64,000 nucleotides of DNA from Styela clava (taxonomy: Eukaryota): NCBI RefSeq assembly GCF_964204865.1, contig NC_135252.1, positions 12,710,001 to 12,774,000 of the forward strand, in the 5' to 3' direction. The notes beneath the pieces were generated by a model. That model was given only the letters and a program-made list of their open reading frames with translations. It made no database searches and was not told the origin of the DNA. A program made the translations under genes and the position numbers. Shown here one piece after another: positions 1,684 through 63,883 of this stretch. Numbering within the stretch: the first letter of the stretch is position 1; every line of letters begins with the position of its first letter.

Positions 1684-4600
1684 CTTGAATTAAGAAGTTT
1701 CAAAACAGATATTATCTAAAAGCATAGCAGTTTCAGAATCAATGTAATAGTATTCAATATACGAAAAGCCATATATTCTTTCCTTTATCAGAATGAAAAT
1801 GAAATATAATCTATCTTGTCTCCATATTTACTCTAGAACTGAGAAGCAACTACAATATCTAAAAAAAATGTTCAAAACGTGCCTATTGCTTTCTTCATAT
1901 AGGATCACTGCCTAATTGGTTAGTCCAACTATAAAACGTCAGCTAGCTGACAAAGTCAAGAATACATAAAACCTAGCTCTTTCGAATCTTCTGCTAAAAA
2001 TTGCAAACAAATGGCTGTATAATAATACTTTCACTAACAAAAATCCTCAATAACCTTCCTGTCTGGCTTCTAATGCTGGCTGTTTAACATCATCATTTGA
2101 TCTTCCATCAGTTAAAATAACCAATATCTTGTCAACATTATCACGACCGAGTGCTTCAAAATGTTTGGTGCCTTGTGTAATTGCATTACCAGTAGCAGTA
2201 CAACCTTTCATTTGGCTGATTTCCATGATGGTTTCTCTCAGATATCTGAATGGATATTGGCCAAGTTCTACTTCAATCTAAATTGAAAACTTGTGAGTTT
2301 AAATAGGTGAAAGACAGAAAAAGTGATATGAAACCAACTTTTACCCGATATTTTGGATTCAGAGCACCAGATGCACACATGAAAGCTGATTCTCCACTGT
2401 ATTCAATTATACCAACCTGAAAATTGGAGAAAACATAACATTAAAAGTCAAACAATAGCATACAATGTGATTACAATTCATTCAAATGAATGTTATGATA
2501 CTGTTTTTCTGTTCCATGTAGGCTCTCTACTGAACCCTTACGATTTCTTATTGAAATAAGCTCAAGCCTTTGTACAGGTGAGCAGTTACTTGATCACAGC
2601 CATATTTGAAGCAGAAATTTTACATTTAATTTCAGAGAGAGCAAATATGACTTTATCCATTGACAAAACATGATCTTTCATTCAGTCACAAATCCGAATT
2701 AGATATTCATCCAGATACATACTTGTAAGGGGAAAAAGACATGACTGACCAGCAATGATAAGGGGCCTCTGCAGAGACCACCTGCCTGAAACCTGATGAG
2801 GAACCATGCAATCCTCTATCTCACATAAAAATGTGGAAACACTCCAATACACAGACAGAAAGTGCTAATCAGAACATGCCAGATACATTCCTAGGTGCTG
2901 GACCCACAGATACCAGAGATGACACTATCAAGACTTCTCGGACTATGAGATGGCATATGAAAAGGTTTGTAGTTTTATGTTAGGGTTCTGTATTACTTAA
3001 ATTGCAATGTACTGGTGTCAGCAGATTACTGGTATAAGTCGCTACTGCCGTAAACAAGCCCAAATGTGATATAAGTCCACATGCATTGATAATTATCAAA
3101 CAACTCCCAAATCAAAGTCATAACTCAAACCATCTTACGCCACCTCATGTCCTTGTTTCGAAAAGTCTGTAAACCCCAGGAATTATACAATATAATGCAA
3201 GACCCTGCCTAGTTGATTTGACAATATCATGAATTACCCTGGTGGCACCAATGTCAATTTCTCCTTGCATATCTTCAAACATTCTAACAACCCATTGTTT
3301 TGCGAATATAAAATCTTCATCATTTATACTTCCCGACCCATCAATTAATAGAATGATATCTCTCGCACAAAGGCCTTGTGAACAGGCTGGAAATAAAGAA
3401 TAATAGTCAAAATGATGAAAAAGAACTCACAAGCTAAAGTATATGGTCAGTTGAGACATCTAAGGCAATACACAAATGACTACTGATATTTAACAATACG
3501 TAAGGACCTTCTATTTTTAGAAATACTGCAATCTTTACGGCTCAGTATTGCGTAACAGCAAGCATGAGACGTAGCTGGCATTGCCAAAACGGCTAAGTAT
3601 AATGATTTAACCAATTTGCCATTCTTTGCACCCTCATCTCTATCATCTTGCTTTTAAAGGATCTTAGTAACTTTTGATCACAGTCACAGATCGATTTGAA
3701 GCAAGCAGTACAAAAATTGCTGTACAAAATTTTGTATAGTTCAAGTATATACACTTAAATTAAATGGTTGAAATGGCCATCGTCCAGGCACAACCAAGTC
3801 TATGTCACTACCTAAGTATGTCATCCAGATTCAGATTTCAACCATGTTTTAATAATAAGAATTGAATTTATCTGATAAAAATATAAATACTTGAGCAGAT
3901 TGGAGGTGGATTTTCCCATATGACATGACCTTGCTTTCCTGCATCAACACATACAATCATTGCACTTCCTTGAACTATATACCCTTCATTACAATCAAAG
4001 CGGCATACAGAGCCATACGAATTATTTTTCGTGCATTCCACTATCCCGTGAGCAGGAGGTAATAGCACCGGCTGACAGGATAATCCTAAAATAAAATAAA
4101 AATGGGGGATTCAAAATCGGAATTTCCCACCGAACGGCAACTGAAACAGTCACATTGATTACACCACTCGTCAGGAGAGCAGAGTTTTTCAGTGGATAAT
4201 GTTTTTTTGTTGCGCAAAATATTCAATCCATGACAGATATAAGCAGTTCAAATGCTGGCCTAAATAACCACGCCCTCTGATGAATTCAAATCGATGATTT
4301 CAACAAAATTAGCTGTGCGAATCGCACTGATTATTAAGCAAAAATTTCAAGAGGGGGAAGTGGGTGAGACCCCCAAAAAAAACCTTGCTGTGCCACTGCT
4401 TACAACTGTACAAGTATTAATATGTAACCAAATAATTTTAAAAACCAAAAAATTACAGTTTATTATTAAGTGAAAAATCATTCAGATACATATTTAAATG
4501 ATTTCAAGGCCAATCCTATACGGCTTGTTACCTGCCACACATATAGGCATTCGAGCATTCCATTGACCAACACCTTTTCCGAGTGGGTCTCCACAAAACA

Positions 4601-7600
4601 ACTGGGATGAACCAACCAAATTGAAACCATCTTTACACCAGATACGACAAAGTGAGGAAAAGCTGTTTTCTTTAGTACAGTCCATCTCCATTTCTGGTAT
4701 AGGTAGTAGAGGAGGGCAGACAACACCTAATAACAGCCAGATATCAAAAAATGACATTATTACTTTTATTAGAAAATAGTGTGTATGTCCTCAACATATG
4801 TATATTTGTATTTATAGGAAAGAAATCATTTAAGGACAGAATACACATACAAGACCCTTCAAGTCATAAAATATTACAAAAAAACGTACTATTTACAAAT
4901 ATAAATGTTCTTCCAAAAACTATACTACATATCAGTGGCCGCTTTTCAAGGCCTTGTTTGATGGAGAATATATCCAGTGGTCTGGCAGTTAAAGTGCTAG
5001 ACTCTGTAAGAATCACAGGTAACACATCTTGGGTTCAAATCCCATGGGGTGTAGTAAATTCGGGATACCGTACCAGTTAGATCTTGCCACTTTATAAAAT
5101 TATAGCTCTTTGAATATTGTTAAATATTAGTGGCTGCTTCTACATGACCTTGTTTGCAGTGAACATGGCAAATGAGCGTCGGATAAAAAAGGATGAAAAA
5201 AAAATCAGTTAACATCAACAACATTACTTATACAACTTCCTGGTGGAGAAATCCATTCAACACTTCCATCCCCATTCATATCACCACACAGAGCAGTTGC
5301 TTGTCCAACTAATTGAAAACTATCATCACAATGAATTGTACATAATTCACTGGCAGGACCATCTTGCTTCAATATACAAGTTACTGTGCCATTATCTATT
5401 GGTCCAGAACAGAGAGAATGATCTGAAATGCACATTTTGTTAAACGAAATGTTAAACGAAAAAGAAATTCTTAATATATGGACAAAATGAAGAAGTTGAA
5501 TAATAGGGCCACCGCAAAGTCAGCTAAGAAATTAGACAAAAAGGGTGAAATATTTCATACCTTTACAGTCAATTTTAATCAAGTCTGTAAGAAAAGTTGT
5601 TGTTACTTCATTTAATTGGTCTGTTGTCGACGCCGTAAATGATCTGATATAATTTTTTTCTAAGAAGTTAGTGGCTTCGTCTCCAACACCAATCCCAAGA
5701 ATAGTGATATCTGAAAATTAACTCTTTAAATTATGTAGTGTATGACAAAGATGGGAGGGAGAAAGCAAAAATTATTATATGTTGGAGCATTTTACTAGTT
5801 TGTGTGTACTTCGCTAGTCTAGTCTGACACATTCTTCCCAAAGGCAGGTATGGCCTTACCGATAGTGAAGTGAATAGTTAAGAAGGCTGAACTTTGCAAG
5901 ATCGGCTAAAAATTTCTTAGCAACACCATAATGAAGCTCTCACCAGATTCATTTGCTTTGTTTAACGCAATATACGTGCCATCTTCAGCTTCACCACCGA
6001 GTAAAAGTACTATGACAGGCATCATATATGGACGTTGCCTTTCTTCAATATACTGCATTGTATCGATCATGGCTCGACCAAGGTGAGAGCATCCTCCAAC
6101 ATGTTTAATTTTTCTTACTTTTCTTTTCAAAGCCTCCATGTTCCGATAATCCAACTCCATTTCTATCTTTTATAAAGTTGGGAGGGTTAGGCTCAATTAT
6201 ATGGTCAGATTGAATGCTTATGTATGGTGCAAAATTGAACAATTTTATGCAATGCATTACTGCCAATTTCAGAATACTTATCATGGCTGTGAAGCCGTAG
6301 AAAATTTTTAAACTCCCCCTAATTTTTATTGGGAAAAACTTCAGCTTCGACTTTTGAATTTGAATTCTGAAAAAATCAAATTTTGATAACAAAAACTTCG
6401 GTGTTGAGTTTTGACTTCTTTATCACTAAAAAAAGCAGACAGAATTTGACTTTGTGGAGCTTGAAATTAAGATTCTCAATCCAGTAAAGATATGCCAAAC
6501 ACAGCTCTGCTACTCATATACCTCTGATGGAATATTGAGCATTTTTAGGATTGAAAAACGGCAAATAGTGGAACACTTCACTGACAACAATATGATTTTC
6601 ATTTATGAGAAAGATCTATACAAAAGTTTACAAAAACAATATATTAATAATATATTGAAAATATTTATGACCTTGAAATGTGGAATTGTATACGCAGTGT
6701 TGCATTTCTTTTCTCTACTTCCATAAACAGCAATAGATATCCAAGTAGCTCCAGCATTGATACCTCCACGAATTTTGTTCAGAGCTCCAGACAACCAATC
6801 ACGAGCGTCAGAAAAGAACCATGATTCCCATTTTTGTGATCCATCCATTAATATGAAAACATCTAAAAGTCCGACGCCACATCCTGAAATATTTATATTC
6901 ACAGATTAAAAATTTGATTTTTCATCTTTGCTACTCATTCCTTTTTGATTGCACCATAGTCTACCACTTAACATTGGGTGCATGAGTGTAATTGACCACA
7001 TAAAGCCCAAGCAAATGTGGTCAAATCCACAACTAGCATAGTTTGACAGTTGGCATATTATGCTAAGCGATAACAACTAGCTTCCCATAGAACTCCTAAA
7101 TACCCTATGTGGGTTAGCACAGTTGAATCCTGTGGGAGGTAATTATGTGCGGGTGGATTATTATTGAACTCTTCGCAGTTGGTCAGTTACCGGTTTGGTA
7201 ACAATAAAGTTTAAAACAAATTACTGGTGAAGGAGTTTTGTCCCAGGGTTGAAGGTGAAGTGACCACCAACAAGACTGACATCAAGGGCATGATGAATCT
7301 TCTTTTTCGATTTATACCCAGCCTTATGTATGGCCGATGATGCTTTTCTTATTTTTTTTATAATTTTTCAATTTTTAACTGGGTCCAAACTAACTTTCCT
7401 TCAAGCTTTTTGATTACCAACCTTACACGCTCCCGTTGCACCACTTGTAATAATAACTGATTAAAAAGCACAACACAAAATGGAATAAACAATGTACCTG
7501 CACAAGAGAGAAGATCTTTATCCCAAAACCCAGCACCATCGTTAACACCTGGATCTGCACAAATAAATTTGACGTTTTCTTTGTATTTTTGTGATTTATG

Positions 7601-52600: not shown

Positions 52601-55600
52601 GATGACCCAAAATTGTTCATATTTGTGCAATCAAATGATGTTCCAACAGAAAAATTGGAATTTGTAAAAAATTGGCATAGTATTCCTGAAAAGAGATTCA
52701 TAAACTTTTACATGAATACAAACAACTTAAAATTTCATGTTGGATAACTAATTTTGCAAATCAAATTGATATTGTGAAGAGCATTCAATGACATCTTATT
52801 GAAGCTCAAAAGAACTGTTGCAATACCATTTTATTACAGATTCAAATAAAAAGGTTAGTTTAGTGCATTTTCCGTTCCACCAGATGCCTCATTCTAAAAT
52901 ATATAGTGAATCAATTAGGAATATTTTACTTACCCCGAAGGAAGGGAAAGTTGATGTTTTTAATCATATATGACAAACCTGGGCAACTAATGACAGCCTG
53001 GCATTAGTAAACCAGTTATTTTCTTCAAGTACATAGACTTGATAGTGAAAAAGGCTGTAACAGACCAGCCATTATGTGAACCACAACAGCGACGGGTTCA
53101 GTGATCCTTCTCACATAACCACCCCCCACTGGATTCGCACCTCCAGTGCTGAGTAGTCAGAGGATGGCAACACTTGATGCACAAACCAACAAGCCAATCT
53201 CCTATTTGGTTTTGTCTTCAAATTACTTTTGTAAATGCGTATATTGAAGCTACTGGCAATGACACATACTTTCAACAATCATGACTGAAAAGTTTTCCAT
53301 TTGATTAACCTGGTTTTATCAGTAAAACAACAATAAATGTGACACTAATAATAGGTGTCATAGCAAAGGTTTAGAGTGAGTGTAACTCAACCAAATATAA
53401 CAGTAAATTATATTTTACCAATACAATTAGAAGCAGCTGCACTCCACTCTCCGACCTCATCATTATTATTATCTTCACAGACAACTGTCTCAGATCCAGT
53501 ACCATCCAATGTCATGCCTTCATTACAACTTACAGTACAAGATGAATCGATTATATTTTCATTTGAACAACTTGCTATCGTATCGCTTGATATAGATTCA
53601 CTGAAATATGGACAGGAGATATCTAAAATAAAGTAATGACATTGTTACAAAGGAGCAAGATAATTTTATCCTCATTAATTATAAAGTGTTATTAATTATG
53701 TCTCATTGATAAAATCAAAAGCATTTTACATACATATTCAGAAAAAAAACGAACCAATACAATCAGGAATTTGAGCATTCCACTCTCCTATTCCATCATC
53801 ATCTGAATCTTCACATTTTATAACACTGGTTTCTACATTTAATTTCTTCTTATCAGGACAACTGAATGTACATTCAGAATCAAATGTATTTGTTCCAGTA
53901 CAATCAAAAACAGTTTCAGGTGCTAGAGTTGATGGATCCAAGGTCGGACAAGTTATGACTGTGAAACAGGATAACATAGGTATTTAACAATTCATTGGTC
54001 AACGATAGGAGTAATACGGAATAGGAAATTGTTCAGAAACTTGTTATTCCAGCTAATTAATAGGTTACCTGGAGTATTCAGTTGGAATATCATGTAATCA
54101 AGCGTCACAATATTGCAACATTTAGCGAAAGCTTTGGAACAATGACCATCTACAACAAGAAATGATTTATATAATCCTGATAGCATTCACTACCTTTACA
54201 ACTAGCTGCAGATTCATTCCATTCTCCTTCTCCGTCACCATCATTATCTTCACAAATCACAGATCCAGATCCTGTACTGTCATCCAATGTCATTCCTTCA
54301 GGACAACTCATATCACAATTTGAATTTTTTATAAATCCATTTGTACATGTTACTTGTGTTTCATTCGTTACAATAGTAGATAGATCAGGACATAGAACAT
54401 CTAGAAAACAAAAAAAAGACTCATGAATGAGCATTTAATACTGTTAATATGTCCTCATGATAATTTTTTCCAAAACAACAATACTTAATAAATCTACTCT
54501 TCTTACCAATACAATCAGGTACATCAATATTCCATTCACCAACACCATCATCATTTGAATCAACACATTCTATTGTGTCCAATCCACCAGTTAATTTCAT
54601 TGTATCAATACATTCGAATGTACAAACTGAACCAAAATTGTTCATATTTGTGCAGTCAAATGATGTTCCAGCAGAAAAATCAGAATTTGAAAATATTTGG
54701 CATAGTATTCCTGAAAAAAAATTCATAAAATATAAATAACAACAAATTACATTAAAAGTTACCAGATTTACCGGCGAATAAGTCGCTTTTCTAGACCAAA
54801 ATTTTTTGCCTGATTTTGGGGAGCCATCCCATTGGGCGAGTATGGTAATTTCCATTTTTTCGGTGTCGGCTTATTATTCAATTCTGACCATGAAATACCT
54901 TGGCCGATAGCATCCCCCAGAACTTCCCATCAGGTCAGTTTAATCCCACAAAACACCAGGTAACACGAGTGTCACCGTGTCCTGAAGCCTACACTACACA
55001 CACACACACATGTACTGAATTGTCCAACAATGCAATGGGCCGTACACCTGTTATAAAATATTTAAATATCAGAACACTCAGTGGCGCACTGATTCCCTAG
55101 GTGTGGCCTTTTTACCAACTGCCTGAAAATATGTCACATATCAGATTGGGTGAAGATGCTTGGAGCAACTATTTTAAAAATCAAAGTAGGATTTAATTTT
55201 AAAAATCATCGTATTTCAATTTAGAATTAATTTATATTAGTTTGTTATCTTTTGTGGAATGTAAATGCATGCACTCAGTTTCTCCTGAGGCTGATAAAAA
55301 TTGTGGTGACACGGATGTCACTGCAGTCACTTGAACACATTTTATCCTTTATTTTCATGAAAAGGTTTGCACTTACTAAGACTCTGTTGAGACTTTAGAG
55401 TCGTAATTTTCGATCAATGCTATTGTAAGGAGCATTCAATAACATTTTAAAGGAATTCAAAGCATTTTTTGCAACAACATTTTACCAAAGATTCAAAAGA
55501 AGGAGTCTAGGGCAGGCAACCTTTTTCGGCTCGCGTGCCAAAATCGGCTTAATTTTAACGACAAAATTCCTCCGCGTGCCGACAAAAATTAAAAACAATG

Positions 55601-58600: not shown

Positions 58601-61600
58601 ACTATCGTTTTTTAAATTCTCTCCTTTTTCTCCTTGTTCTCTCTCAAAAACGTCACGATCGATTATACCTTGTTATGACGACCATGCATGAAATGGCTAA
58701 TCACGTGCCACCGGGCGGGCATTAGTAATGACATGTTTATCACAAAATGAAGGCGAGAGAAATATCGGGAAACCAATTAAGCAAGCCGGGAGCGAGAGTG
58801 GTCTGAGCTCGGAGCGCCGCCGCTTGCCCGGTGAAAAACATCCCGTAAAAATATTTCCGCTTTATGTACCGATACCTAATTTTAGCGATTCGAAAATCAG
58901 CCGAAAAACGATTCGAATAATTTGCGATTCGATTCGATTTCGAATATCTGGTTCGCTTGGACAGCCCTATGCAGTACCAGGAGTATAATCAGAATTTCAG
59001 ATTTTCAATGATGATTAGAGAGGTCAAAATTCAAACAAAACCTCAAAGAGCATTTTTCACTAGTTATTCAGCAGTATATCAAAGAAGGCTAAGACACACC
59101 AAAGATTTCTGTATTAAAATTTCTTAAGTTCAAAACTGGAATCGAGTCAAAATTCATTACAACTCGGACCAATAGACAACTAATTATGTCCATATTCAAG
59201 TTGATTTTCTAAAAATACTTACTACCAGTTACTATGCATATATTGACATCCTTATTTCAAATACATTTAAGTTGTTGACTTCTTATCAGAGACGACAAAA
59301 AATCTAATCTACAAATGAAATTGCAGAGAAAAACTGACCAATACAATCAGGTATTGGAGCATTCCACTCTCCTATTCCATCATCATCAGAATCTTCACAT
59401 TTTATAACACTGGTTTCTACATTTAATTTCCTTCTATCAGGACAACTGAATGTACATTCAGAATCAAATATATTTGATCTCGTGCAATCAAAAACAGTGT
59501 CAGGTGCTAGAGTTGATGGATCCAAAGTTGGGCAAGTGATGTCTGTGATTCAGAGAAGCATTATAATTTATTAAATCATGAGTCAGAAAAAGAGGAACAA
59601 GATAAATAGTCAAACAAAGTAAATAAGAAAACTAAAAAGTTTAAATGAATGTATCTCATATACGGGTGTCTTATGAATAACAGGTAATGAGCGCTTCAAT
59701 ATTCCCAACAAATTTATTATGTCTTATTAAGCTAATTCACAAAATTCAAAAAACCTAGCTTTGCATATTATTATCTATGAGCATAATTGCACTATATTAT
59801 GAGCATAATTGCACATCTTCAACTTCCACATTACTTCCACTTATACATATCAATATATCATTACTGCGTCTAGTTTGGTGACTAAGAAAATAATGTTCTG
59901 CAATCAAGACAAGAAAGTTCATACTGTATTTTACCTAGCCCTGTCATCAATCAAAATTAGTAGGCAAAGTTAACAGAAATACCCAAAACCCATGAGAACG
60001 AAAATAAGTTCTCCAACCTCTCAATGCCTCAATGGTCGTCTGAAGAACTTTGGTATAAAAAAAAATCACAAAAAAAGCATCATTAGCAATGAATGTTACA
60101 TAGTTGGTATTTCTGGTAACAAAACATTAAAGCATCTCATCCAAGTAGCCCGCCTGATGTCCTATTTTTGGATCGTAATGAAAATAAACTACTGAAGTAG
60201 TCGACTTTTTAAGAGTATAATAGCTTTCATGTCGTGTAAATTATTCAATCCATGTCAACTGCAAGAATGTAAAATGTGTTTCTTTTTTAATCTAATTGTG
60301 TTCAATGTAACTGGCGGTTGCGTCTTCTTACCACAAAACAAAAACATCACTACTCCAAAATACCCTGGCAATCTGTGGACATGAAAATTTCGTTTTGATA
60401 CATACTTTTGCTATCTGGCGAATCCGATATTATTGTTAAAAAAATGCATAAAATAAAATTTTTTTCAGTACAATGAAAATACATATACCGTATTTCTTCG
60501 CGAAGCAGTCGCTTTTCTAGACCCAAATTTTTGGCCTGATTTTGGGGGGATCGTCTTATTAGGCGAGTATGATAATTTTCATTTTTTTGCTGTCGCCTTA
60601 TTATGTATTAGGTAGGTAATGTTCTTTTATGGTGGACGCAATCGCAAGTTGAACACAATTAGATTAAAATTTAAAGAATTACCATAGTTATTATGGATTG
60701 AATATCTCGCTACAAGAAAATGTCATTATAAGCGTTTTTGACCAACAAGCAAACGCGGCGACCGCTCAAAAGGCATTTCATGGTAATTTGTGATTCAGAT
60801 GTTGATGCGATTTTACTACCCCGACTTATTGGCAGGTTATATGCAAAAACCCATTTTTTCAGGCTTGGAAACGGGCTTCGTCTTATTTACTGGGTAGACT
60901 TATTCGACAGGAAATCCGGTAGGTGTTTTAGTAAATGTATATCCAATATTCATCGCCTCGATACTTTTTCGAAGAATTATTTCTATGTCGCCTAAAAGTA
61001 ATAAATTCCTAATCGATACAGGCATATTTAAAATGTTTTGCTTTAATAATTTAATTTTCTTCAATTTAACCTGCGGTTGCATCGACAAGATAAAAGCATC
61101 ACTAGTCACTACCCCAAAATACCACTGTAGTCCGGGGAAATAAAAAATGTGTGGTTAACTGCACGATTATATCTTGTTTTTACTGCCATTTTGCGAATTC
61201 GACAAATATGAGCTGTACTTGCAACACTGACTCCACTCTATCGCAATGCTGCCACTCACATTATTTTCAAAATATGATCTGAGAAAAATCCCCAGGTTTG
61301 GTATAAAATCTTACTGAGCAGAATTTAATTGAGTATGTACAATAAAAATTGAATGCATATTCTTTAGATTATTTATCTTATATATCATGACAATCCGGGA
61401 AAATGTCCAACCTTGTATAATGCTAACATGAAAATTTTCGATAGCAATTTAAAGGAATGGATAAATGTATAAAGAGGTAAATTCTGAGCACTATTACATG
61501 TGTTTCATTTCAGTGACGGTATGGTTTTCAACGTCAATCAAACGTATTAATGATATTTTGAGATATTCAATGCCTAAAGAAGTGTATTTAATCTATCGCG

Positions 61601-63883
61601 AATCTCCTACAACAAAACGTTTGATTCCTGTTTTAATCTACAGTAATATTTTATTTTGCCGCTTTTCAATCAAAAAATTTGAAGCGCGAATTTATTCATT
61701 TGTGTGTCTTTAACATCTCGCGTCCATGAATATATAAAAATGTTCACTGTATTCACAATTATGTGAAAGTACAAGATATACTTATGTTGAGAAAAATTTG
61801 TGATTGAAAGATGAATTACCACAGACGTAATTAATTATGTTTACGTCCTAAATAACATGTGAAGCAAACGAAAACAAAATGCAATCGCATATTTTATAAG
61901 CGACTTTTTCAGTTATTCGAAAATTTCAAAAGGGGGAGGGGGCTCCACCCCAACCCCCTTGGCTGCACAACTGCACCCAGGCATGGCCAAAATATCAAAA
62001 TATCCAAGAATGGGTTTGAAATAGGTGTAGTAAATTATGAGCAAACTTTATATAAAATTTAAATAACCCATTTATTACCATCACTTACAGACACAATCCG
62101 GTATTGACAAATTCCATTCACCATTGAGATCGTTATCAACATCCTCACATTTAATCTCATTATGATCAACTGTAAGCCTTGTGCTATATCCACAGTGGAA
62201 TACACAATTAGAGTTCAGGTTGTCTGAATCAGTACAAGAGAAATATGTCTCAAAAGACAGTATTTCTGCATCAATTTTCGGACACTTTATTGCTGAAAAT
62301 GTTGAAATAAAAATATATTGGTTGTAAGACATTTTACGATAGAGAAAATCTTGAAACCAATGGAGGCTTATTTACACTATTCACAATGAACAGTCACACT
62401 TGAATCTAACAAAGGTGAGGAGCTATTATTCTTGGAATTATCACAATCTTTCAAGTTTGTCATTGTCTACAGATTTTATTTCGCCAACCTGCGTTCTGCG
62501 ATCGACTAAAATCTTGAAAAAGGTTCGCGATCGACTGATCGGTAATAAGATCATACACGAAAACGAATGGGTACTGAATATGCAGATAACTGCACACACA
62601 CATACAAAAAATTTCCCCGCTTCCAATAAGCTTAGCTTTGTAGGTGCATTCTTTAATTAAGGAAATTAACACACAATTTTTATTTGTATGTTCTATTTTA
62701 GCTGTTAAATTGATTGTACCAGAGTAAATGTTTCATCATTTATTTAAGATTTATTCAAAGCATTCAATTCAGATATACCGGTAAGCCTGCCTAATTTTTA
62801 GTCGTAAGTGTTGAAAATTTCTCAAGAAACCTCGCTAAGTATCAATGTATTATCTGAAGAGCGAATAATGAATATTCTCAAACCATGAGTGCTACATGTC
62901 TGTTCAAACTTCAGTATCTAATTTACAATTGCCACCAAGTGCTTCTTCGCTTTTTTGGAATTAAAAAAATAGTTCATTTTGATGCCGCTGCCACCATTGC
63001 GGATAAAATTGATCACACTACTCTTGGAGTGAGACAATAACTTTCGCATACTGCAGAAGTTATTGTAGGAACGTTCTTAGCCACCAATAATTGATAATTC
63101 ATTTCGAAACCTTAGCAGCGGCAAAACTTGCATTTATTACGTAATAAGATGCTGTGTCGGGCTTGCCCCAGATCGCATTTTGAGTACAGTGTACTCCTGT
63201 ACAGAGTACAGTATTCTTCCTGTTTTAAAACACTCAACTGGTTCAAGGAAATTTTTTGATGTATGTTATAAACTTCACTCAACATCAGACGTGATGGACT
63301 GCGCGAGATGTGGCGATCGACAGGTCGATCACAATCGACGTGTTGGCCACCCTGGTATATAGCGATGTGTGAAAAGTAAGATAAAAACTACCTACATACA
63401 TTATTTAAGCTAATTGAGAATTTGCCTGCAGGATTTACTAAAAATAGTTACATAACACTATAATTGTCGAAAATACTTCTAATGCAGGCCGGTTGATCGC
63501 AATCGACGAGTTGGCCACCCCTGAAATATAGCGATGTGTAAAAAGTAAGGTAAAAAATTACATACAATTGTAGGCTAACTGAAAATATCGCCTGCAGGAT
63601 TTGTTAAAAATAATTACATAACACTATAATTGTCGAACATACTCCTAATGTACTGAAACATCCCAGTTCTGATTACCTATAGCAAAACAGCTTGGAAACG
63701 ATGGAGTCCATATTCCATCAAAATCCCCATCTGGGTCAATGCAGTTAGAAATATCAGTATCCGAATTGAGTTGAAATCCATGATCACAATAAAATTTACA
63801 TTGTGGGTTTCCGTCCGCTTCGGAAAAATAACAGTAATAGCCCGTTCCTGGAGAAATTCCTTCCACACTAGGGCAATGCACAT
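1516..63883 (-). CDS. Giant multi-exon extracellular protein gene (partial, 5' end outside window): 55x sushi/CCP - vWA - 3x sushi - vWA; selectin/SVEP1-like modules; 65 exons, about 4,330 aa in window
   Basis: Regular series of about 200-nt minus-strand exons with AG/GT boundaries, all phase 1, each encoding C-x-C-x-S-x-C-x-F-x-C-x-C-x-W-x-P-x-C; frames join into two vWA domains at the 3' end. Confidence 0.9.
2055..2277 (-). CDS. vWA domain 2, exon c
   Basis: IEVEL...KGCTATGNAI...ILVILTDGRSNDDV. Confidence 0.88.
2345..2416 (-). CDS. vWA domain 2, exon b
   Basis: VGIIEYSGESAFMCASGALNPKYR, phase 0-0. Confidence 0.82.
3238..3386 (-). CDS. vWA domain 2, exon a
   Basis: DIILLIDGSGSINDEDF...GATR, intact DxSxS (hand-translated). 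Confidence 0.88.
3891..4085 (-). CDS. Sushi exon 58
   Basis: 195 nt, CVDAGKQGHVIWENPPPIC. Confidence 0.88.
4532..4726 (-). CDS. Sushi exon 57
   Basis: 195 nt, CGDPLGKGVGQW. Confidence 0.88.
5228..5422 (-). CDS. Sushi exon 56
   Basis: 195 nt, CGDMNGDGSVEW. Confidence 0.88.
5561..5710 (-). CDS. vWA domain 1, exon c
   Basis: DITILGIGVG...IDCK (hand-translated). Confidence 0.85.
5944..6166 (-). CDS. vWA domain 1, exon b
   Basis: IEMEL...GGCSHLGRAM...VIVLLLGGEAED; 223 nt, the same length as vWA2 exon c. Confidence 0.82.
6672..6883 (-). CDS. vWA domain 1, exon a
   Basis: LDVFILMDGSQKW...ISIAVYG; beta-A strand with degenerate DxSxS. Confidence 0.85.
7498..7698 (-). CDS. Sushi exon 55
   Basis: 201 nt, CADPGVNDGAGFW. 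Confidence 0.85.
8539..8718 (-). CDS. Sushi exon 54 (canonical short loop)
   Basis: 180 nt, CTKEGIWNSSTPTC, no acidic insert. Confidence 0.88.
9434..9643 (-). CDS. Sushi exon 53
   Basis: 210 nt, CEDRNRDGIGEW. Confidence 0.88.
9808..10135 (+). mobile_element. tRNA-derived SINE, family A (near full length)
   Basis: A-box-like tggcgcatcatgctaag, degenerate B-box gatttgaatcc; body ggtcggttacggct..ggactggtaac..ggttcgccatatg shared with other copies. Confidence 0.7.
10519..10716 (-). CDS. Sushi exon 52
   Basis: 198 nt, CSPPLKPPENG...CGLTETEDGGEW. Confidence 0.85.
11287..11484 (-). CDS. Sushi exon 51
   Basis: 198 nt, CVDKNGDGDGEW; last Cys codon split by the intron (T|GT). Confidence 0.8.
12053..12256 (-). 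CDS. Sushi exon 50
   Basis: 204 nt, CEDNDGDGNGEW. Confidence 0.88.
12816..13016 (-). CDS. Sushi exon 49
   Basis: 201 nt, hand-translated VSCKFDEK...CQDLDGDDFGDW. Confidence 0.88.
13902..14105 (-). CDS. Sushi exon 48
   Basis: 204 nt, CEDVDETSRGKW. Confidence 0.88.
14652..14852 (-). CDS. Sushi exon 47
   Basis: 201 nt, hand-translated DVVKCKPKL...CTDDNNDGIGRW. Confidence 0.85.
15654..15854 (-). CDS. Sushi exon 46
   Basis: 201 nt, CNDNDFDKIGEW. Confidence 0.88.
16555..16767 (-). CDS. Sushi exon 45
   Basis: 213 nt, CLENEEEEDAYLW; acceptor less certain. Confidence 0.8.
17134..17449. mobile_element. hAT-type MITE
   Basis: TIR cagggctactcaact / agttgagtagccctg; 8-bp TSD atatagac. Confidence 0.9.
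17747..17941 (-). CDS. Sushi exon 44
   Basis: 195 nt, hand-translated GIKCLPEY...CFDENNDGIGDW. Confidence 0.85.
18361..18564 (-). CDS. Sushi exon 43
   Basis: 204 nt, CKDKDKDGKGEW. Confidence 0.88.
19036..19242 (-). CDS. Sushi exon 42
   Basis: 207 nt, hand-translated AINCTELDL...CQDLDDDGVGEW (not in ORF track). Confidence 0.88.
19860..20048 (-). CDS. Sushi exon 41
   Basis: 189 nt, CEDPHGNKTGKW. Confidence 0.85.
20262..20480 (-). mobile_element. SINE family A, reverse copy (further partial copies about 7050-7200 +, 8790-8965 -, 11800-12005 +)
   Basis: gcatggacttgatggtg, ctctcgcacattattatc shared motifs. Confidence 0.5.
20627..20827 (-). CDS. Sushi exon 40
   Basis: 201 nt, CEDLNNDEHGSW. Confidence 0.88.
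21907..22113 (-). CDS. Sushi exon 39
   Basis: 207 nt, CEDRDADGFGEW. Confidence 0.88.
22245..23393. mobile_element. Degenerate or nested MITE with ccgata subterminal repeats
   Basis: Clusters of ccgata/gataccgata at 22245-22310 and 23330-23390; termini not resolved. Confidence 0.4.
23395..23640. repeat. Local tandem duplication (~140-bp unit)
   Basis: cagtagctttagtcac..gtgttcgc..agattc.ctcagaaa..taagtgtgtgtgacctt occurs twice. Confidence 0.8.
23780..23977 (-). CDS. Sushi exon 38
   Basis: 198 nt, CHDSNKDGVGEW. Confidence 0.88.
24797..25021 (-). CDS. Sushi exon 37
   Basis: 225 nt, CGDTDGDFNGEW. Confidence 0.88.
26088..26291 (-). CDS. Sushi exon 36
   Basis: 204 nt, CNDDDNDGFGDW. Confidence 0.88.
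26469..26675 (-). CDS. Sushi exon 35
   Basis: 207 nt, CEDANDDGVGEW. Confidence 0.88.
27014..27220 (-). CDS. Sushi exon 34 (unit 8, R4)
   Basis: 207 nt, CEDDDGDGEGEW. Confidence 0.9.
27823..28032 (-). CDS. Sushi exon 33 (unit 8, R3)
   Basis: 210 nt (extra VP), R3 repeat. Confidence 0.9.
29198..29401 (-). CDS. Sushi exon 32 (unit 8, R2)
   Basis: 204 nt, CEDNNNDKVGEW. Confidence 0.9.
29504..29843. mobile_element. Degenerate hAT-type MITE
   Basis: Imperfect TIR cagagatgtgcaac / gttgcacacatctg; ccatagaa on both flanks. Confidence 0.6.
29905..30108 (-). CDS. Sushi exon 31 (unit 8, R1)
   Basis: 204 nt, CEDSNDDGVGEW. Confidence 0.9.
30426..30700 (+). mobile_element. tRNA-derived SINE, family A
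   Basis: tggcgcattatgct, B-box ggttcgaacc, same body as the 9808 copy. Confidence 0.7.
30846..31052 (-). CDS. Sushi exon 30 (unit 7, R4)
   Basis: 207 nt, R4 repeat. Confidence 0.9.
31546..31749 (-). CDS. Sushi exon 29 (unit 7, R3)
   Basis: 204 nt, R3 repeat. Confidence 0.9.
33326..33529 (-). CDS. Sushi exon 28 (unit 7, R2)
   Basis: 204 nt, CEDNNNDEIGEW. Confidence 0.9.
33917..34120 (-). CDS. Sushi exon 27 (unit 7, R1)
   Basis: 204 nt, R1 repeat. Confidence 0.9.
34380..34586 (-). CDS. Sushi exon 26 (unit 6, R4)
   Basis: 207 nt, R4 repeat. Confidence 0.9.
35610..35813 (-). CDS. Sushi exon 25 (unit 6, R3)
   Basis: 204 nt, CVDSNNDGVGEW. Confidence 0.9.
36210..36900. repeat. Degenerate ~9-bp minisatellite (tgtacca/tgcacca-rich) in R2-R3 intron; also 38950-39600, 42370-42900, 49060-50030, and inverted at 28690-28930
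   Basis: Recurring tg(c/t)ac(c/a)a motif at about 9-nt spacing. Confidence 0.7.
37138..37341 (-). CDS. Sushi exon 24 (unit 6, R2)
   Basis: 204 nt, R2 repeat. Confidence 0.9.
37593..37796 (-). CDS. Sushi exon 23 (unit 6, R1)
   Basis: 204 nt, R1 repeat. Confidence 0.9.
38063..38269 (-). CDS. Sushi exon 22 (unit 5, R4)
   Basis: 207 nt, CEDIDGDGEGEW. Confidence 0.9.
38366..38569 (-). CDS. Sushi exon 21 (unit 5, R3)
   Basis: 204 nt, R3 repeat. Confidence 0.9.
39846..40049 (-). CDS. Sushi exon 20 (unit 5, R2)
   Basis: 204 nt, R2 repeat. Confidence 0.9.
40237..40963 (+). mobile_element. hAT (Charlie/Buster-like) internal-deletion element with N-terminal transposase remnant
   Basis: TIR caggggtgggcaca; TSD gattatac; broken frame MSSIKKRTYKDKNR..EWEE / KPLC*IC...SNVKRHHETNH zinc finger. 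Confidence 0.88.
41029..41232 (-). CDS. Sushi exon 19 (unit 5, R1)
   Basis: 204 nt, CEDSDDDGTGEW. Confidence 0.9.
41499..41705 (-). CDS. Sushi exon 18 (unit 4, R4)
   Basis: 207 nt, R4 repeat. Confidence 0.9.
41803..42006 (-). CDS. Sushi exon 17 (unit 4, R3)
   Basis: 204 nt, R3 repeat. Confidence 0.9.
43141..43344 (-). CDS. Sushi exon 16 (unit 4, R2)
   Basis: 204 nt, CQDNNDDEIGEW. Confidence 0.9.
43585..43788 (-). CDS. Sushi exon 15 (unit 4, R1)
   Basis: 204 nt, R1 repeat. Confidence 0.9.
44003..44312 (-). repeat. 3' LTR of Gypsy element
   Basis: Direct repeat of 47902-48211; preceded on the minus strand by a weak purine tract AAAGTGGCGGTGAA. Confidence 0.95.
44325..45512 (-). CDS. Gypsy integrase (continuation of pol after frameshifts)
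   Basis: HDALCHPG..CPVC zinc finger, IDIKGP, HSDRGS, NGQVERFN DDE motifs. Confidence 0.92.
   Translation of the reverse strand: MTFVIVGQENIPSDALSKISCATVQDPENHLLYKLHDALCHPGITRMSHFIQVRNLPYSMDDIRKVISTCPVCCECKPRFHNPDTGHLIKATQAFERLNIDIKGPLPSNNNNRYFLYVVDEFSRFPFAFPCPDVSTASVIKCLTQLFTTFGMPAFIHSDRGSAFMSRELRSFLNDKGIATSRTTPYNPAGNGQVERFNGTIWNGVKLALKSKRLPVQLWHEVLPDVLHSIRSLLCTATNETPHERVFKFSRRSTSGCSIPSWMSTPGPVLLKRYVRKSKTEPLVDEVELLEANPQYAHVRFPDGRETTVASKHLAPVGYEISMNRQGTDNINHETPLHVRDESSIQPMSPSINQGNNKTQTQEDIVENNIVSRSPSPPVLRRSIRERRTVDRLNL
45631..47856 (-). CDS. Gypsy gag-protease-reverse transcriptase-RNase H N-part (frameshifted in RNase H)
   Basis: Two CCHC knuckles (CFFC..H..C, CFKC..H..C), LFDSCS protease site, VDLKSAYHQ, LPFG, YFDN, ETDAS. 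Confidence 0.92.
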   Translation of the reverse strand: MDKVLRPERLEADPNSSEASCEWLHWKKTFDNFLNALPSEGLDKLGVLVNFISPRIFQNIEEAESYDTAIEILKTMFVKPLNEVYSRHVLATRNQQASENVDEYMQALKSLSKHCNFKAVSAVQNRDAYVRDAFIRGLNSTWIRQRLLENKHLDLNTTYDQARSLEVAIKNAEAYRVSDPSTVSAAAQNSETQNDETSCDIEKISATANSACFFCGGKKHPRSKCPARNVFCFKCHKKGHFIKVCRGTVFNPQNPDKVTACSNSYILGMAFDNTPKSLRGSSSVIHIEGHKVRALFDSCSSQSFIHPRLIERCNLPIKRDTVKDKVAMASLACSMPIKGCTAADIEYQGRHYRKFILRVMDDLCCDFLLGIDFQGQHQSVTYNYGGDRPPMSVCGFSTFKSLPPEPFKNLTADCHPIATKSLWYSKDDRKFIEMEVNRLLQEGIVKPSRSPWRAQVVVVKGENGKRRVVIDYSQTINKFTQLDAFPLPNMSDIINEIAHYRVYSTVDLKSAYHQVPLEKEDQKYTAFEAAGALFQFTRLPFGVTNGVACFQRAMMNLVKEENLTGVFAYFDNITICGHTQQDHDINLQKFLEAAKRRNLKLNENKSIFSTRKLQILGYEIEEGQIRPDPGRLEPLRRLPIPTSVSALKRCLGFFSYYSKWIPKFSDTIRPLASAKTFPLDDQAIHAFHELKRLVESAVVIAVDETLPFEVETDASDVALAATLKWLFSLACYKVQNSNTLQ
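47885..47900 (-). promoter_or_regulatory. Non-tRNA primer-binding site complementary to LTR segment 47939-47954 (self-priming type)
   Basis: Minus-strand TTTATTCAACTTAAAT 1 nt after the 5' LTR; no TGG start; perfect 16-nt complement inside the LTR. Confidence 0.75.
47902..48211 (-). repeat. 5' LTR of Gypsy element
   Basis: Direct repeat of 44003-44312, TG...CA termini. Confidence 0.95.
48269..48475 (-). CDS. Sushi exon 14 (unit 3, R4)
   Basis: 207 nt, R4 repeat. Confidence 0.9.
48575..48778 (-). CDS. Sushi exon 13 (unit 3, R3)
   Basis: 204 nt, R3 repeat. Confidence 0.9.
49343..49828. mobile_element. hAT-type MITE
   Basis: TIR caggcctgcacaac / gttgtgcaggcctg; 8-bp TSD atctactt; ggcccg subterminal motifs. 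Confidence 0.9.
50591..50794 (-). CDS. Sushi exon 12 (unit 3, R2)
   Basis: 204 nt, CEDNNNDDFGEW. Confidence 0.9.
51069..51272 (-). CDS. Sushi exon 11 (unit 3, R1)
   Basis: 204 nt, CEDFDDDGVGEW. Confidence 0.9.
52148..52354 (-). CDS. Sushi exon 10 (unit 2, R4)
   Basis: 207 nt, ag/gt, R4 repeat. Confidence 0.9.
52482..52685 (-). CDS. Sushi exon 9 (unit 2, R3)
   Basis: 204 nt, ag/gt, R3 repeat. Confidence 0.9.
52930..53185 (-). mobile_element. SINE family A, reverse copy (paralogous copy at about 56520-57230 split by an insertion)
   Basis: aatcatat..ccagttattt..gtaacagacc..ctcacataacc..tggattc matches reversed family A. Confidence 0.55.
53419..53622 (-). CDS. Sushi exon 8 (unit 2, R2)
   Basis: 204 nt, ag/gt, R2 repeat. 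Confidence 0.9.
53755..53958 (-). CDS. Sushi exon 7 (unit 2, R1)
   Basis: 204 nt, ag/gt, R1 repeat. Confidence 0.9.
54194..54400 (-). CDS. Sushi exon 6 (unit 1, R4)
   Basis: 207 nt, CPDLSTIVTNET...CEDNDGDGEGEW. Confidence 0.9.
54507..54710 (-). CDS. Sushi exon 5 (unit 1, R3)
   Basis: 204 nt, ...CIDTMKL...CVDSNDDGVGEW. Confidence 0.9.
55513..56433 (-). mobile_element. hAT (GTF2IRD2/EPM2AIP1-like) deletion derivative with C-terminal transposase remnant
   Basis: TSD gtctaggg; right TIR ggttgcccacccctg, left TIR partly deleted; ORF 55725-56021 FSSTYAC..LFS..KS..RSSL..QKSH. Confidence 0.85.
57477..57680 (-). CDS. Sushi exon 4 (unit 1, R2)
   Basis: 204 nt, CPYLNEFISS...CEDNNNDKVGEW. Confidence 0.9.
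57899..58969. mobile_element. hAT (Ac-like) MITE
   Basis: TIR tagggctgtccaa / ttggacagcccta; 8-bp TSD tgcagtac; subterminal tcgaat/attcga repeats. Confidence 0.9.
59339..59542 (-). CDS. Sushi exon 3 (unit 1, type R1)
   Basis: 204 nt, CPTLDPSTLAP...CEDSDDDGIGEW. Confidence 0.9.
60486..60921. mobile_element. pogo/Tc1-like MITE (related fragments at about 54760-54880 and 34995-35520)
   Basis: Ends taccgtatttc / gaaatccggta; internal gtcgcttttctagacc(c/a)aaatttt..gcctgattttgggg shared with 54780. Confidence 0.55.
62089..62292 (-). CDS. Sushi exon 2
   Basis: 204 nt, phase 1-1, CEDVDNDLNGEW. Confidence 0.88.
62478..63354. mobile_element. Degenerate hAT-like element
   Basis: gcgatcgac subterminal motifs at both ends, right end ttggccaccctg; left TIR eroded. 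Confidence 0.45.
63325..63650. repeat. Local tandem duplication (~167-bp unit) including a transposon end
   Basis: caatcgacg..ttggccaccc..tatagcgatgtgt..gcctgcaggattt..cataacactataattgtcgaa occurs twice. Confidence 0.8.
63677..63883 (-). CDS. Sushi exon 1 (first in window)
   Basis: ag/gt bounded, 207 nt, 6 Cys, loop CIDPDGDFDGIW. Confidence 0.85.
   Translation of the reverse strand: MCIALVWKEFLQERAITVIFPKRTETHNVNFIVIMDFNSIRILIFLTALTQMGILMEYGLHRFQAVLL

What the first reader, a model, noticed from the sequence alone, without database searches (positions are those of the whole stretch)
3891..63883. Giant array of six-Cys sushi modules with a grafted Dx[DN]xDG-type acidic loop: a candidate Ca2+-binding CCP variant
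Seen: 50 of 58 modules have C-x-D-x-[DN]-x-D between Cys5 and the conserved Trp, 36 with the full DxDxDG or DxNxDG and most with E/D at position 9 (e.g. CEDNDGDGEGEW, CVDKNGDGDGEW). The pattern holds even in highly diverged modules. Exon 54 shows the ordinary short loop (CTKEGIW). Established: selectin-type SCRs have six Cys and only a short turn here, and D-x-[DN]-x-D-G-x-x-[DE] is the Ca2+ loop of integrin alpha FG-GAP repeats and EF-hand-like sites. Inference: a >4,300-aa secreted rod with about 50 cation sites capped by vWA domains, possibly a Ca-stiffened matrix, adhesive or mineralisation scaffold. I do not recognise this combination as a named family.
Basis: partly seen in the sequence, partly recalled or inferred. 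Interest (0 to 1): 0.8.

Follow-up and report, generated by a model that had tools for sequence, protein, structure and literature searches.

The report
Sea-squirt sushi array with calcium-type loops
A sea squirt (very probably Styela clava) expresses a giant gene of 58 sushi/CCP modules plus a vWA domain, and most modules carry a conserved loop with the sequence signature of a calcium-binding site, which I found reported for no sushi domain and which no test here shows to bind calcium.

Summary
On the minus strand, 58 one-module exons (3891-63883) are all phase 1-1 with AG/GT splice sites and six invariant Cys plus Trp. Of these, 50 carry C-x-D-x-[DN]-x-D, 36 add Gly6, and 35 have the full Dx[DN]xDG-xx-[DE]. 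Only exon 54 has the ordinary short loop.

The gene is real. Spliced transcript contigs from three studies join exons 47-53 at the predicted ends. The eight copies of a four-module unit differ by 6-12% with dN/dS 0.18-0.30.

The same loop occurs in Ciona, Phallusia and other Styela proteins, including four-Cys CCPs. It occurred in none of about 65 non-tunicate sushi proteins examined. Variants occur in Clavelina.

The pattern matches the integrin-type "calcium blade" signature, so I consider Ca2+ binding likely (about 0.6). About 35 canonical sites are predicted, not 50.

The window holds one C-terminal vWA. Upstream lie C-type-lectin-like exons, giving a selectin-like layout. CR1/CR2 CCPs already have nine-residue loops at this position.

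Verdict: a new variant of a known domain.

The parts
63677..63883 (-). exon/module 1; 10-residue loop, acid triad without Gly6
62089..62292 (-). exon/module 2; triad without Gly6, acid at +9
59339..59542 (-). exon/module 3 (unit type Ra, copy 1); full Dx[DN]xDGxx[DE]
57477..57680 (-). exon/module 4 (Rb, copy 1); triad without Gly6
54507..54710 (-). exon/module 5 (Rc, copy 1); full motif
54194..54400 (-). exon/module 6 (Rd, copy 1); full motif
53755..53958 (-). exon/module 7 (Ra, copy 2); full motif
53419..53622 (-). exon/module 8 (Rb, copy 2); triad without Gly6
52482..52685 (-). exon/module 9 (Rc, copy 2); full motif
52148..52354 (-). exon/module 10 (Rd, copy 2); full motif
51069..51272 (-). 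exon/module 11 (Ra, copy 3); full motif
50591..50794 (-). exon/module 12 (Rb, copy 3); triad without Gly6
48575..48778 (-). exon/module 13 (Rc, copy 3); full motif
48269..48475 (-). exon/module 14 (Rd, copy 3); full motif
43585..43788 (-). exon/module 15 (Ra, copy 4); full motif
43141..43344 (-). exon/module 16 (Rb, copy 4); triad without Gly6
41803..42006 (-). exon/module 17 (Rc, copy 4); full motif
41499..41705 (-). exon/module 18 (Rd, copy 4); full motif
41029..41232 (-). exon/module 19 (Ra, copy 5); full motif
39846..40049 (-). exon/module 20 (Rb, copy 5); triad without Gly6
38366..38569 (-). exon/module 21 (Rc, copy 5); full motif
38063..38269 (-). exon/module 22 (Rd, copy 5); full motif
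37593..37796 (-). exon/module 23 (Ra, copy 6); full motif
37138..37341 (-). exon/module 24 (Rb, copy 6); triad without Gly6
35610..35813 (-). exon/module 25 (Rc, copy 6); full motif
34380..34586 (-). exon/module 26 (Rd, copy 6); full motif
33917..34120 (-). exon/module 27 (Ra, copy 7); full motif
33326..33529 (-). exon/module 28 (Rb, copy 7); triad without Gly6
31546..31749 (-). exon/module 29 (Rc, copy 7); full motif
30846..31052 (-). exon/module 30 (Rd, copy 7); full motif; the module modelled with AlphaFold2
29905..30108 (-). exon/module 31 (Ra, copy 8); full motif
29198..29401 (-). exon/module 32 (Rb, copy 8); triad without Gly6
27823..28032 (-). exon/module 33 (Rc, copy 8); full motif
27014..27220 (-). 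exon/module 34 (Rd, copy 8); full motif
26469..26675 (-). exon/module 35; full motif
26088..26291 (-). exon/module 36; full motif
24797..25021 (-). exon/module 37; triad without Gly6
23780..23977 (-). exon/module 38; full motif
21907..22113 (-). exon/module 39; full motif
20627..20827 (-). exon/module 40; triad without Gly6 and without acid at +9
19860..20084 (-). exon/module 41; 10-residue loop, triad lost
19036..19242 (-). exon/module 42; full motif
18361..18564 (-). exon/module 43; full motif (a regex mis-hit was corrected)
17747..17941 (-). exon/module 44; full motif
16555..16767 (-). exon/module 45; 11-residue Glu-rich loop, no triad
15654..15854 (-). exon/module 46; triad without Gly6
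14652..14852 (-). exon/module 47; Dx[DN]xDG but Arg at +9; both exon ends confirmed by spliced RNA contigs
13902..14105 (-). exon/module 48; triad lost; exon ends confirmed by RNA
12816..13016 (-). exon/module 49; triad without Gly6; exon ends confirmed by RNA
12053..12256 (-). exon/module 50; full motif; exon ends confirmed by RNA
11287..11484 (-). exon/module 51; full motif; 3' end corrected by RNA, with the last Cys codon split T|GT across the intron to exon 52
10519..10716 (-). exon/module 52; 10-residue loop without triad; exon ends confirmed by RNA
9434..9643 (-). exon/module 53; full motif; exon ends confirmed by RNA
8539..8718 (-). exon/module 54; the only ordinary short (5-residue) loop; best Pfam Sushi score of those tested (36.5 bits)
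7498..7698 (-). exon/module 55; 11-residue loop, no triad
5228..5422 (-). exon/module 56; full motif
4532..4726 (-). exon/module 57; 10-residue loop, acid ligands lost
3891..4085 (-). exon/module 58; 10-residue loop, acid ligands lost; natural control modelled with AlphaFold2
3238..3386 (-). vWA exon 1 (phase 1 to 0), with the MIDAS D-x-S-x-S; boundaries predicted from AG/GT and frame, not checked by RNA
2345..2416 (-). vWA exon 2 (phase 0-0); predicted
   Evidence: similarity to the paralogue P0020
2055..2277 (-). vWA exon 3 (phase 0 to 1); Pfam VWA E = 6e-10; predicted boundaries
1490..1683 (-). last vWA exon; the open frame runs to a TGA at 1490-1492, and a further splice from an internal GT is not excluded

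Best explanation
The window holds most of one expressed minus-strand gene of an ascidian, very probably Styela clava.

Shown:
- The product is a chain of 58 six-Cys (selectin-type) CCP/sushi modules, one per phase 1-1 exon, followed by a vWA domain with an intact MIDAS motif.
- Modules 3-34 are eight diverged copies of a four-module unit, kept under purifying selection.
- In 55 modules the turn between Cys5 and the core Trp is lengthened from 5 to 10 residues.
- In 35 modules this loop reads Dx[DN]xDG-xx-[DE] between two beta strands.

Inferred:
- The loop is a Ca2+ site of the integrin calcium-blade / EF-hand-loop type. The ligands would be the side chains at positions 1, 3 and 5, the carbonyl of residue 7, and the acid at position 9.
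- Sea-squirt body fluid is close to sea water (about 10 mM Ca2+), so the sites would be permanently filled and would have a structural role.
- The hairpin lies just after Cys5, which pairs with the first Cys of the module. It therefore projects from the N-terminal pole, next to the short 3-4-residue linker to the preceding module. Bound Ca2+ would probably stabilise each module and stiffen the module-to-module joints, as Ca2+ does in tandem cbEGF domains.
- The 14 modules without Gly6 and the 8 without the triad probably bind weakly or not at all.
- The rod would present C-type-lectin-like domains at one end and a MIDAS vWA at the other, for adhesion or recognition.
For: - Gene structure and motif counts.
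- Expression and splicing: contigs from four runs of three studies join exons 47-53 at the predicted ends, with GT..AG introns on the minus strand.
- Six invariant Cys and the Trp. The profile aligns end to end with E-selectin CCPs.
- Constraint: 22 of 30 non-redundant module types keep the triad, against 0.57 expected. Unit copies have dN/dS 0.18-0.30, and the Asp1, [DN]3, Asp5 and Glu9 positions never vary among copies of a unit type; the sites that do vary within the loop are the x positions and, in type Rb (which lacks the Gly), position 6. Loss of the triad goes with loss of the +9 acid (17/3 versus 1/4, Fisher p = 0.012).
- Cross-species: the same 10-residue loop occurs in 14/28 and 10/22 CCPs of two Ciona intestinalis proteins, in 9/21 CCPs of a Phallusia protein, and in Styela paralogues.
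- Pattern definition: the calcium blade is Dx[DN]xDG plus an acid two residues later, in a strand-loop-strand setting. Grafting such a loop between two strands of CD2 created a Ca2+ site (PMC3123361).
- vWA: Pfam E = 6e-10 and 3.5e-5, with the D-x-S-x-S motif present.
Against: - No metal-binding test is possible with these tools.
- The naturally degenerate module 58 is modelled almost as confidently (mean pLDDT 92.3, about 89 across the loop region). An ordered loop in a model therefore says nothing about Ca2+.
- Fourteen triad loops lack the Gly that all known Ca-binding instances have (PMC3123361). Clavelina and one Ciona protein have Pro there.
- Asp/Asn/Gly-rich loops are also simply good turn formers.
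- The stiffening role and the position at the module junction are inferred from general CCP topology and were not modelled.
- The N-terminus, the signal peptide and the tissue of expression are unknown.
Confidence: 0.6

Rival explanations
1. The lengthened acidic hairpin is a metal-free surface feature. It would be a rigid, negatively charged knob used for binding a basic partner, for hydration or anti-aggregation of a very long rod, or simply as a favoured turn. The match to Dx[DN]xDG would then be convergence on Asp/Asn/Gly turn formers.
For: - Long loops at the same place exist without the triad in CR1, CR2 and Crry CCPs, in a holothurian 'P-selectin' and in a nemertean protein.
- The degenerate module 58 keeps the same hairpin in the model.
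- Fourteen loops lack Gly6 and some homologues have Pro6.
Against: - The conserved positions are exactly 1, 3, 5, 6 and 9 of the Ca2+ pattern, while positions 2, 4 and 7 vary freely.
- The non-tunicate long loops do not show this periodicity.
- The +9 acid is lost together with the triad.
Confidence: 0.25
2. The loop binds a different cation that ascidians handle, such as Fe, Mn, Sr or vanadyl, and the protein is a metal store or carrier, or a mineralisation scaffold, rather than a Ca-stiffened rod.
For: - Carboxylate-rich sites are promiscuous.
- The rod has about 35-50 repeated sites.
- These points rest on general knowledge of ascidian metal handling, not on any tool result here.
Against: - An all-oxygen Asp/Asn/carbonyl site with this spacing is the classical Ca2+ geometry (PMC3123361).
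- The ambient fluid holds about 10 mM Ca2+.
- No spicule or mineral link was found in the literature searches.
- The loop occurs in ordinary lectin-CCP proteins of Ciona and Phallusia.
Confidence: 0.07
3. The high motif count is a by-product of copying one founder unit, with no constraint on the loop itself.
For: Thirty-two of the 58 modules are eight copies of one four-module unit.
Against: - The triad is kept in 22 of 30 module types that share only 21-47% identity.
- It is also kept in orthologues and paralogues of three other ascidian genera.
- Unit copies differ at dS 0.18-0.32 but keep every ligand residue.
Confidence: 0.05

Closest known systems
Selectin / SVEP1-type six-cysteine CCP (sushi, SCR) modules
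   Same: - About 60-residue CCP fold, with six Cys in the same spacing, the core Trp and the Gly-x-Trp.
- One phase 1-1 exon per module.
   Different: - Selectin CCPs have a 5-residue turn between Cys5 and Trp. Here 55 of 58 modules have 10 residues, mostly with the acid pattern.
- The acid-loop modules fall below Pfam's Sushi threshold or are missed.
Long-loop CCPs of CR1, CR2 and Crry (for example CR2 SCR1, CR1 CCP2/9/16)
   Same: - An insertion at the same position, giving a 9-residue loop rich in Ser, Asp, Asn and Gly and ending in Gly-x-Trp.
- The structures are solved, and they align with the model.
   Different: - They are one residue shorter, four-Cys, and have no Asp1/[DN]3/Asp5/Gly6/acid9 periodicity.
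- I know of no metal site reported there (own knowledge).
Dx[DN]xDG calcium loops, especially the integrin alpha / FG-GAP 'calcium blade'
   Same: Same linear pattern, including the acid two residues after the Gly, in the same strand-loop-strand setting (PMC3123361).
   Different: - The host fold is a CCP, not a beta-propeller, so this is a resemblance in mechanism and not family membership.
- Binding and loop geometry are untested.
- No sushi/CCP context is listed in that survey.
Tunicate lectin-CCP proteins annotated 'SVEP1-like', 'complement receptor type 2-like' or 'E/P-selectin-like' (Ciona XP_026695874 group, Phallusia CAB3266737, Styela XP_039248480 and XP_077967218, Clavelina CAK8697520)
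   Same: - The same 10-residue acid loop in many of their CCPs.
- C-type lectin at the N-terminus and/or vWA at the C-terminus.
- These are the true relatives.
   Different: - They are much shorter (10-28 CCPs), and most of their loop-bearing CCPs have four Cys.
- Clavelina and one Ciona protein have Pro in place of Gly6 or 11-residue loops.
- A 4,777-aa Styela paralogue has 13-residue loops.
Calcium-binding EGF (cbEGF) arrays of fibrillin and Notch
   Same: A functional analogy only: a small disulfide-rich module in long tandem arrays, with an acidic site at its N-terminal pole where Ca2+ rigidifies the joint to the preceding module (established knowledge).
   Different: The fold and the motif are different, and the analogy is inference.

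Membership tests
Sushi / CCP / SCR domain (Pfam PF00084) | About 60 residues with four framework Cys, an invariant Trp, and Gly-x-Trp before the last Cys | tested here: met
   The six Cys and the Trp are invariant in 58/58 modules, and the Gly is present in over 90%.
Sushi / CCP / SCR domain (Pfam PF00084) | Significant match to the family profile | tested here: inconclusive
   Modules with short or degenerate loops pass the 20.7-bit threshold (26-36 bits). Of the four repeat-unit modules tested, which carry the acid triad, three gave no Sushi hit and one scored 17.4 bits. Three other triad modules (exons 1, 47, 51) scored 20.2-26.5 bits.
Sushi / CCP / SCR domain (Pfam PF00084) | CCP beta-sandwich fold | tested here: met
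Sushi / CCP / SCR domain (Pfam PF00084) | Disulfides I-III and II-IV (plus a third in six-Cys modules) | not testable with these tools
   No coordinates or chemistry were available.
Selectin-type six-Cys CCP | Two extra Cys flanking the segment before the C-x3-C | tested here: met
   All 58 modules have them. The profile aligns end to end with E-selectin CCPs.
Selectin family proper | C-type lectin, EGF, CCPs, transmembrane segment and cytoplasmic tail | tested here: not met
   C-type-lectin-like exons lie just upstream (Pfam E = 7e-4 to 0.03, below threshold), and the nearest one has a phase-1 donor that fits exon 1. However, no EGF exon was seen, and the chain ends in a vWA with no hydrophobic tail in the last open frame.
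SVEP1 / polydom orthologue | vWA, CCPs, HYR, EGF and pentraxin domains together | tested here: not met
   Only CCP and vWA were found in the window, and lectin-like exons upstream. 'SVEP1-like' is only the automatic name of the homologues.
Dx[DN]xDG calcium-binding loop (Rigden and Galperin) | Asp at position 1, Asp/Asn at 3, Asp at 5 | tested here: met
   50/58 modules and 22/30 non-redundant types.
Dx[DN]xDG calcium-binding loop (Rigden and Galperin) | Gly at position 6 (present in all known metal-binding instances) | tested here: inconclusive
   Met in 36 modules. Not met in 14 triad modules, including the whole Rb unit type.
Dx[DN]xDG calcium-binding loop (Rigden and Galperin) | At least one further acidic ligand later in the sequence | tested here: met
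   Glu or Asp two residues after the Gly position in 47 of 50 triad modules, the same spacing as in calcium blades.
Dx[DN]xDG calcium-binding loop (Rigden and Galperin) | Canonical loop backbone (0.55 A or less to calmodulin EF-hand 1) and a bound Ca2+ | not testable with these tools
   The structure tool returns no coordinates and models no ions. pLDDT does not discriminate, as the control shows.
Integrin alpha FG-GAP / calcium-blade family | The motif sits in a blade of a beta-propeller | tested here: not met
   The host fold is a CCP, and Pfam gave no FG-GAP match. The loop may work like a calcium blade, but it is not a member.
von Willebrand factor A domain (PF00092) | Profile match and the MIDAS residues D-x-S-x-S ... 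T ... D | tested here: met
   E = 3.5e-5 and 6e-10 for two exons. The motif can be read in the sequence.

The most novel reading that the evidence does not exclude
These are the first calcium-binding CCP/sushi modules. They would give a new natural structural context for the Dx[DN]xDG loop, the natural counterpart of the loop engineered into CD2. The loop arose in tunicates and spread through their lectin-CCP-vWA proteins. In this gene, about 35 sites in a row would make a roughly 4,000-residue rod whose stiffness and stability depend on Ca2+, as in cbEGF arrays.
Probability: 0.5. Interest if true: 0.7.

Novelty: new variant of a known kind. Interest (0 to 1): 0.55.

Why it matters
CCP/sushi modules are among the commonest extracellular building blocks, found in complement regulators, selectins and many receptors, and they are treated as metal-free.

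A lineage-wide variant with a built-in Ca2+ site would add a new context to the catalogue of Dx[DN]xDG loops. It would show that evolution reached the cbEGF solution, a Ca2+ ion at each module joint, a second time on a different fold.

It would also supply a ready-made natural series for testing how the loop works: full-motif, Gly-less, degenerate and short-loop modules all sit in one protein. For tunicate biology it flags a family of lectin-CCP-vWA proteins whose automatic names ('SVEP1-like', 'CR2-like') hide a shared, unstudied feature.

If the loop does not bind metal, the finding reduces to a lineage-specific loop insertion in a very large but otherwise ordinary sushi-repeat gene.

Tried and rejected
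- **Pfam on single modules.** Pfam confirms Sushi only weakly for the repeat-unit modules. I did not take this as evidence against the fold, because the model and the PDB comparisons are clear.
The loop is ordered. The control with degenerate module 58 shows the criterion does not discriminate, so I do not count it as support for Ca2+.
- **Atlas search.** The ESM Atlas did not accept the window's own exon. With the Phallusia homologue it returned only generic Sushi clusters.
- **Assembly artefact or pseudo-exons.** Rejected. Unit copies differ by 6-12% with dN/dS 0.18-0.30, every exon is open with intact splice sites, and RNA contigs are spliced as predicted.
- **Founder-effect explanation of the motif count.** Rejected.
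- **Membership in the selectin, SVEP1 or FG-GAP families.** Each fails a defining feature.
- **Mineralisation scaffold.** No support in three literature searches.
- **My first donor for exon 51 (11254).** It was wrong. RNA puts the exon end at 11287.
- **Literature.** Five searches and the Dx[DN]xDG survey gave no description of a Ca-binding sushi domain. The library covers open-access papers only, so this is absence of evidence.
Full report
**What is in the window.** The window is G000:C3:12710001-12774000 of a 377-Mb assembly. I therefore take the genome to be Styela clava. Other notes of this scan say the same.

A six-frame scan finds 58 six-Cys sushi-like modules, all on the minus strand. 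Each module is one exon of 180-225 nt with a polypyrimidine-AG acceptor and a GT donor. Every exon starts and ends in phase 1, so the array is freely modular. The outer exon ends are 63883 and 3891, exactly the coordinates given. The 58 exons sum to 11,838 nt, or 3,946 residues.

Downstream on the same strand lie four exons of a vWA domain (Pfam E = 3.5e-5 and 6e-10). They have a readable MIDAS D-x-S-x-S and phases that fit exon 58. The last open frame ends at a TGA at 1490-1492 without a hydrophobic tail.

Upstream, outside the window, the minus strand carries C-type-lectin-like exons (weak Pfam matches) and a few diverged sushi modules. The nearest lectin exon ends in a phase-1 G|GTAAGA donor about 490 bases before exon 1. 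The layout is therefore probably lectin(s) - CCP x 58 or more - vWA. I did not establish the true 5' end.

**The motif.** Two modules that my regular expression first mis-parsed were corrected.

The loop from Cys5 to Trp is 10 residues long in 55 modules and 11 in two (exons 45 and 55). Only exon 54 has the ordinary 5. Modules 3-34 are eight copies of a four-module unit, so I reduced the set to 30 types at 70% identity. Of these, 22 keep the triad, against 0.57 expected when each loop's residues are shuffled. Fourteen keep the full pattern, against 0.06 expected.

In the non-redundant 10-residue loops the conserved positions are Asp1 (24/25), Asp/Asn3 (21/25), Asp5 (20/25), Gly6 (15/25), Gly8 (23/25) and Glu/Asp9 (18/25). 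Positions 2, 4 and 7 vary freely. Gly8 is the ordinary sushi Gly-x-Trp glycine. The novelty is therefore a five-residue insertion between Cys5 and that glycine.

**The gene is real and expressed.** Contigs from four public runs belonging to three studies lie on window 9400-14900 as spliced pieces. The joints are at 9643/10519, 10716/11287, 11484/12053, 12256/12816, 13016/13902 and 14105/14652. The skipped parts all end CT..AC on the plus strand, which is GT..AG on the minus strand. These are my predicted exon ends, with one correction. Exon 51 ends at 11287, so its last Cys codon is split T|GT across the intron. One contig of 5,879 nt runs about 2 kb further on each side. The runs are labelled only as probable RNA, but the splicing shows that they are RNA.

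The eight unit copies are 88-94% identical in nucleotides, with dS 0.18-0.32 and dN/dS 0.18-0.30. The Asp1, [DN]3, Asp5 and Glu9 positions never vary among copies of a unit type. The sites that do vary within the loop are the x positions and, in type Rb (which lacks the Gly), position 6. This is neither an assembly artefact nor a decaying array.

As a control I modelled module 58, which has the long loop but has lost the acid ligands. It is almost as confident, with mean pLDDT 92.3 and about 89 over the loop region. The loop is thus ordered in models, but that does not test metal binding.

**Relatives.** A profile of the 58 modules, run against 1.84 billion representative proteins, gave 2,389 hits. 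Among the best 150, the same 10-residue loop with Dx[DN]xDG occurs only in three tunicate proteins:
- a Phallusia protein (9 of 21 CCPs);
- two Styela clava paralogues, one of them on the same chromosome and ending in the same three-CCP-plus-vWA tail.

Related variants are also tunicate:
- 11-residue loops in Ciona;
- Asp-x-Asn-x-Asp-Pro loops alternating with short loops in a Clavelina CCP-vWA protein;
- 13-residue loops in a 4,777-residue Styela protein.

A word-based search with the Phallusia protein added two Ciona intestinalis proteins with the loop in 14/28 and 10/22 CCPs. About 65 other sushi proteins in that search carried no loop with the triad. They came from amphioxus, vertebrates, echinoderms, hemichordates, molluscs, arthropods, annelids, nematodes and a sponge.

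In Ciona and Phallusia most loop-bearing modules are ordinary four-Cys CCPs behind a C-type lectin domain. The loop is therefore a tunicate-wide CCP feature, not a property of six-Cys modules. The Styela genome has further loci that match the profile.

**What is already known at this position.** The PDB profile search shows that CR1, CR2 and Crry CCPs have nine-residue, Ser/Asp/Asn/Gly-rich loops at the same place, ending in Gly-x-Trp. A holothurian 'P-selectin' and a nemertean protein have 10-11-residue loops. None of these has the Asp1/3/5-Gly6-acid9 periodicity.

**Mechanism.** The Dx[DN]xDG survey (PMC3123361) states the following:
- The metal is held by the side chains at positions 1, 3 and 5 and by the carbonyl after the motif.
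- At least one later acidic residue is always added.
- In the propeller 'calcium blades' that residue follows after two residues, in a strand-loop-strand setting.
- All metal-binding instances have the Gly.
- Inserting such a loop between two strands of CD2 sufficed to create a Ca2+ site.
- Sushi/CCP is not among the 16 folds listed.

Thirty-five modules here meet every sequence criterion, in the same secondary-structure setting. I therefore consider Ca2+ binding the most likely function, at about 0.6.

The hairpin follows directly on Cys5, the partner of the module's first Cys, so it must project from the N-terminal pole. That pole lies next to the 3-4-residue linker to the preceding module. 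This follows from standard CCP topology and was not modelled. By analogy with cbEGF arrays, a filled site there would stabilise the module and stiffen the joint. In sea-water-like body fluid the sites would be permanently occupied. These last steps are inference.

The Gly-less Rb-type modules, the Pro6 variants and the modules without the triad argue that not every long loop binds metal. They also leave room for the rival reading of a metal-free acidic knob.

**Limits.**
- Tissue of expression is unknown because run identities are coded.
- The window's own protein did not appear among the database hits. I cannot say whether it is annotated.

**Verdict.** I classify the feature as a new, tunicate-restricted variant of the CCP module with a probable, untested Ca2+ site, set in a large but otherwise conventional lectin-CCP-vWA gene.

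Noticed in passing
window 44325-47856 (minus strand), inside intron 14 (43789-48268): A Ty3/gypsy-type LTR retrotransposon lies in the same orientation as the gene. One open frame of 741 aa carries gag, aspartyl protease, reverse transcriptase and RNase H. A second of 395 aa carries the integrase. I only observed it.
   Followed up: partly
window 63003-63361 (intron 1): An interspersed repeat has at least 40 copies at 72-79% identity on many contigs of the same genome.
   Followed up: no
window 48476-48574 (intron 13): This 99-nt intron between an Rc and an Rd module is stop-free and in frame, so the two exons read through as one 177-aa open frame. The equivalent introns in other unit copies are 96-132 nt. 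Retention would insert 33 residues without breaking the frame. Whether it happens was not tested.
   Followed up: no
window 11285-11287 / 10715-10716: The codon of the last Cys of module 51 is split by the intron, with T in exon 51 and GT in exon 52. Spliced RNA contigs show this. All other modules keep that codon whole.
   Followed up: yes
window 9400-14900: Transcript contigs from different studies differ from the assembly at 1-8 positions per 200-nt exon, and they differ from each other. This fits the high heterozygosity usual in ascidians.
   Followed up: no
P0001 (Styela clava XP_039258803, 4,777 aa; another chromosome): This paralogue has 53 CCPs whose Cys-to-Trp loop is 13 residues long. 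A conserved Asp-Asp-Asn-x-Asn-Gly lies directly before x-Trp. It may be a shifted version of the same kind of site.
   Followed up: no
L007 (G000:C3:12705001-12710000), minus strand; L005 1-3510, plus strand: The downstream neighbours are a gene with transporter-like hydrophobic exons and a 1,170-aa open frame of low-complexity, repeat-rich sequence on the other strand. Neither belongs to the sushi gene.
   Followed up: no
G000:C3:15874062-15883838, C9:4629156-4632109, C4:6266287-6271701, C6:9854657-9884054 and others: Further loci of the same genome match the module profile. Some are in open frames of 630-810 aa that hold several modules without introns.
   Followed up: no
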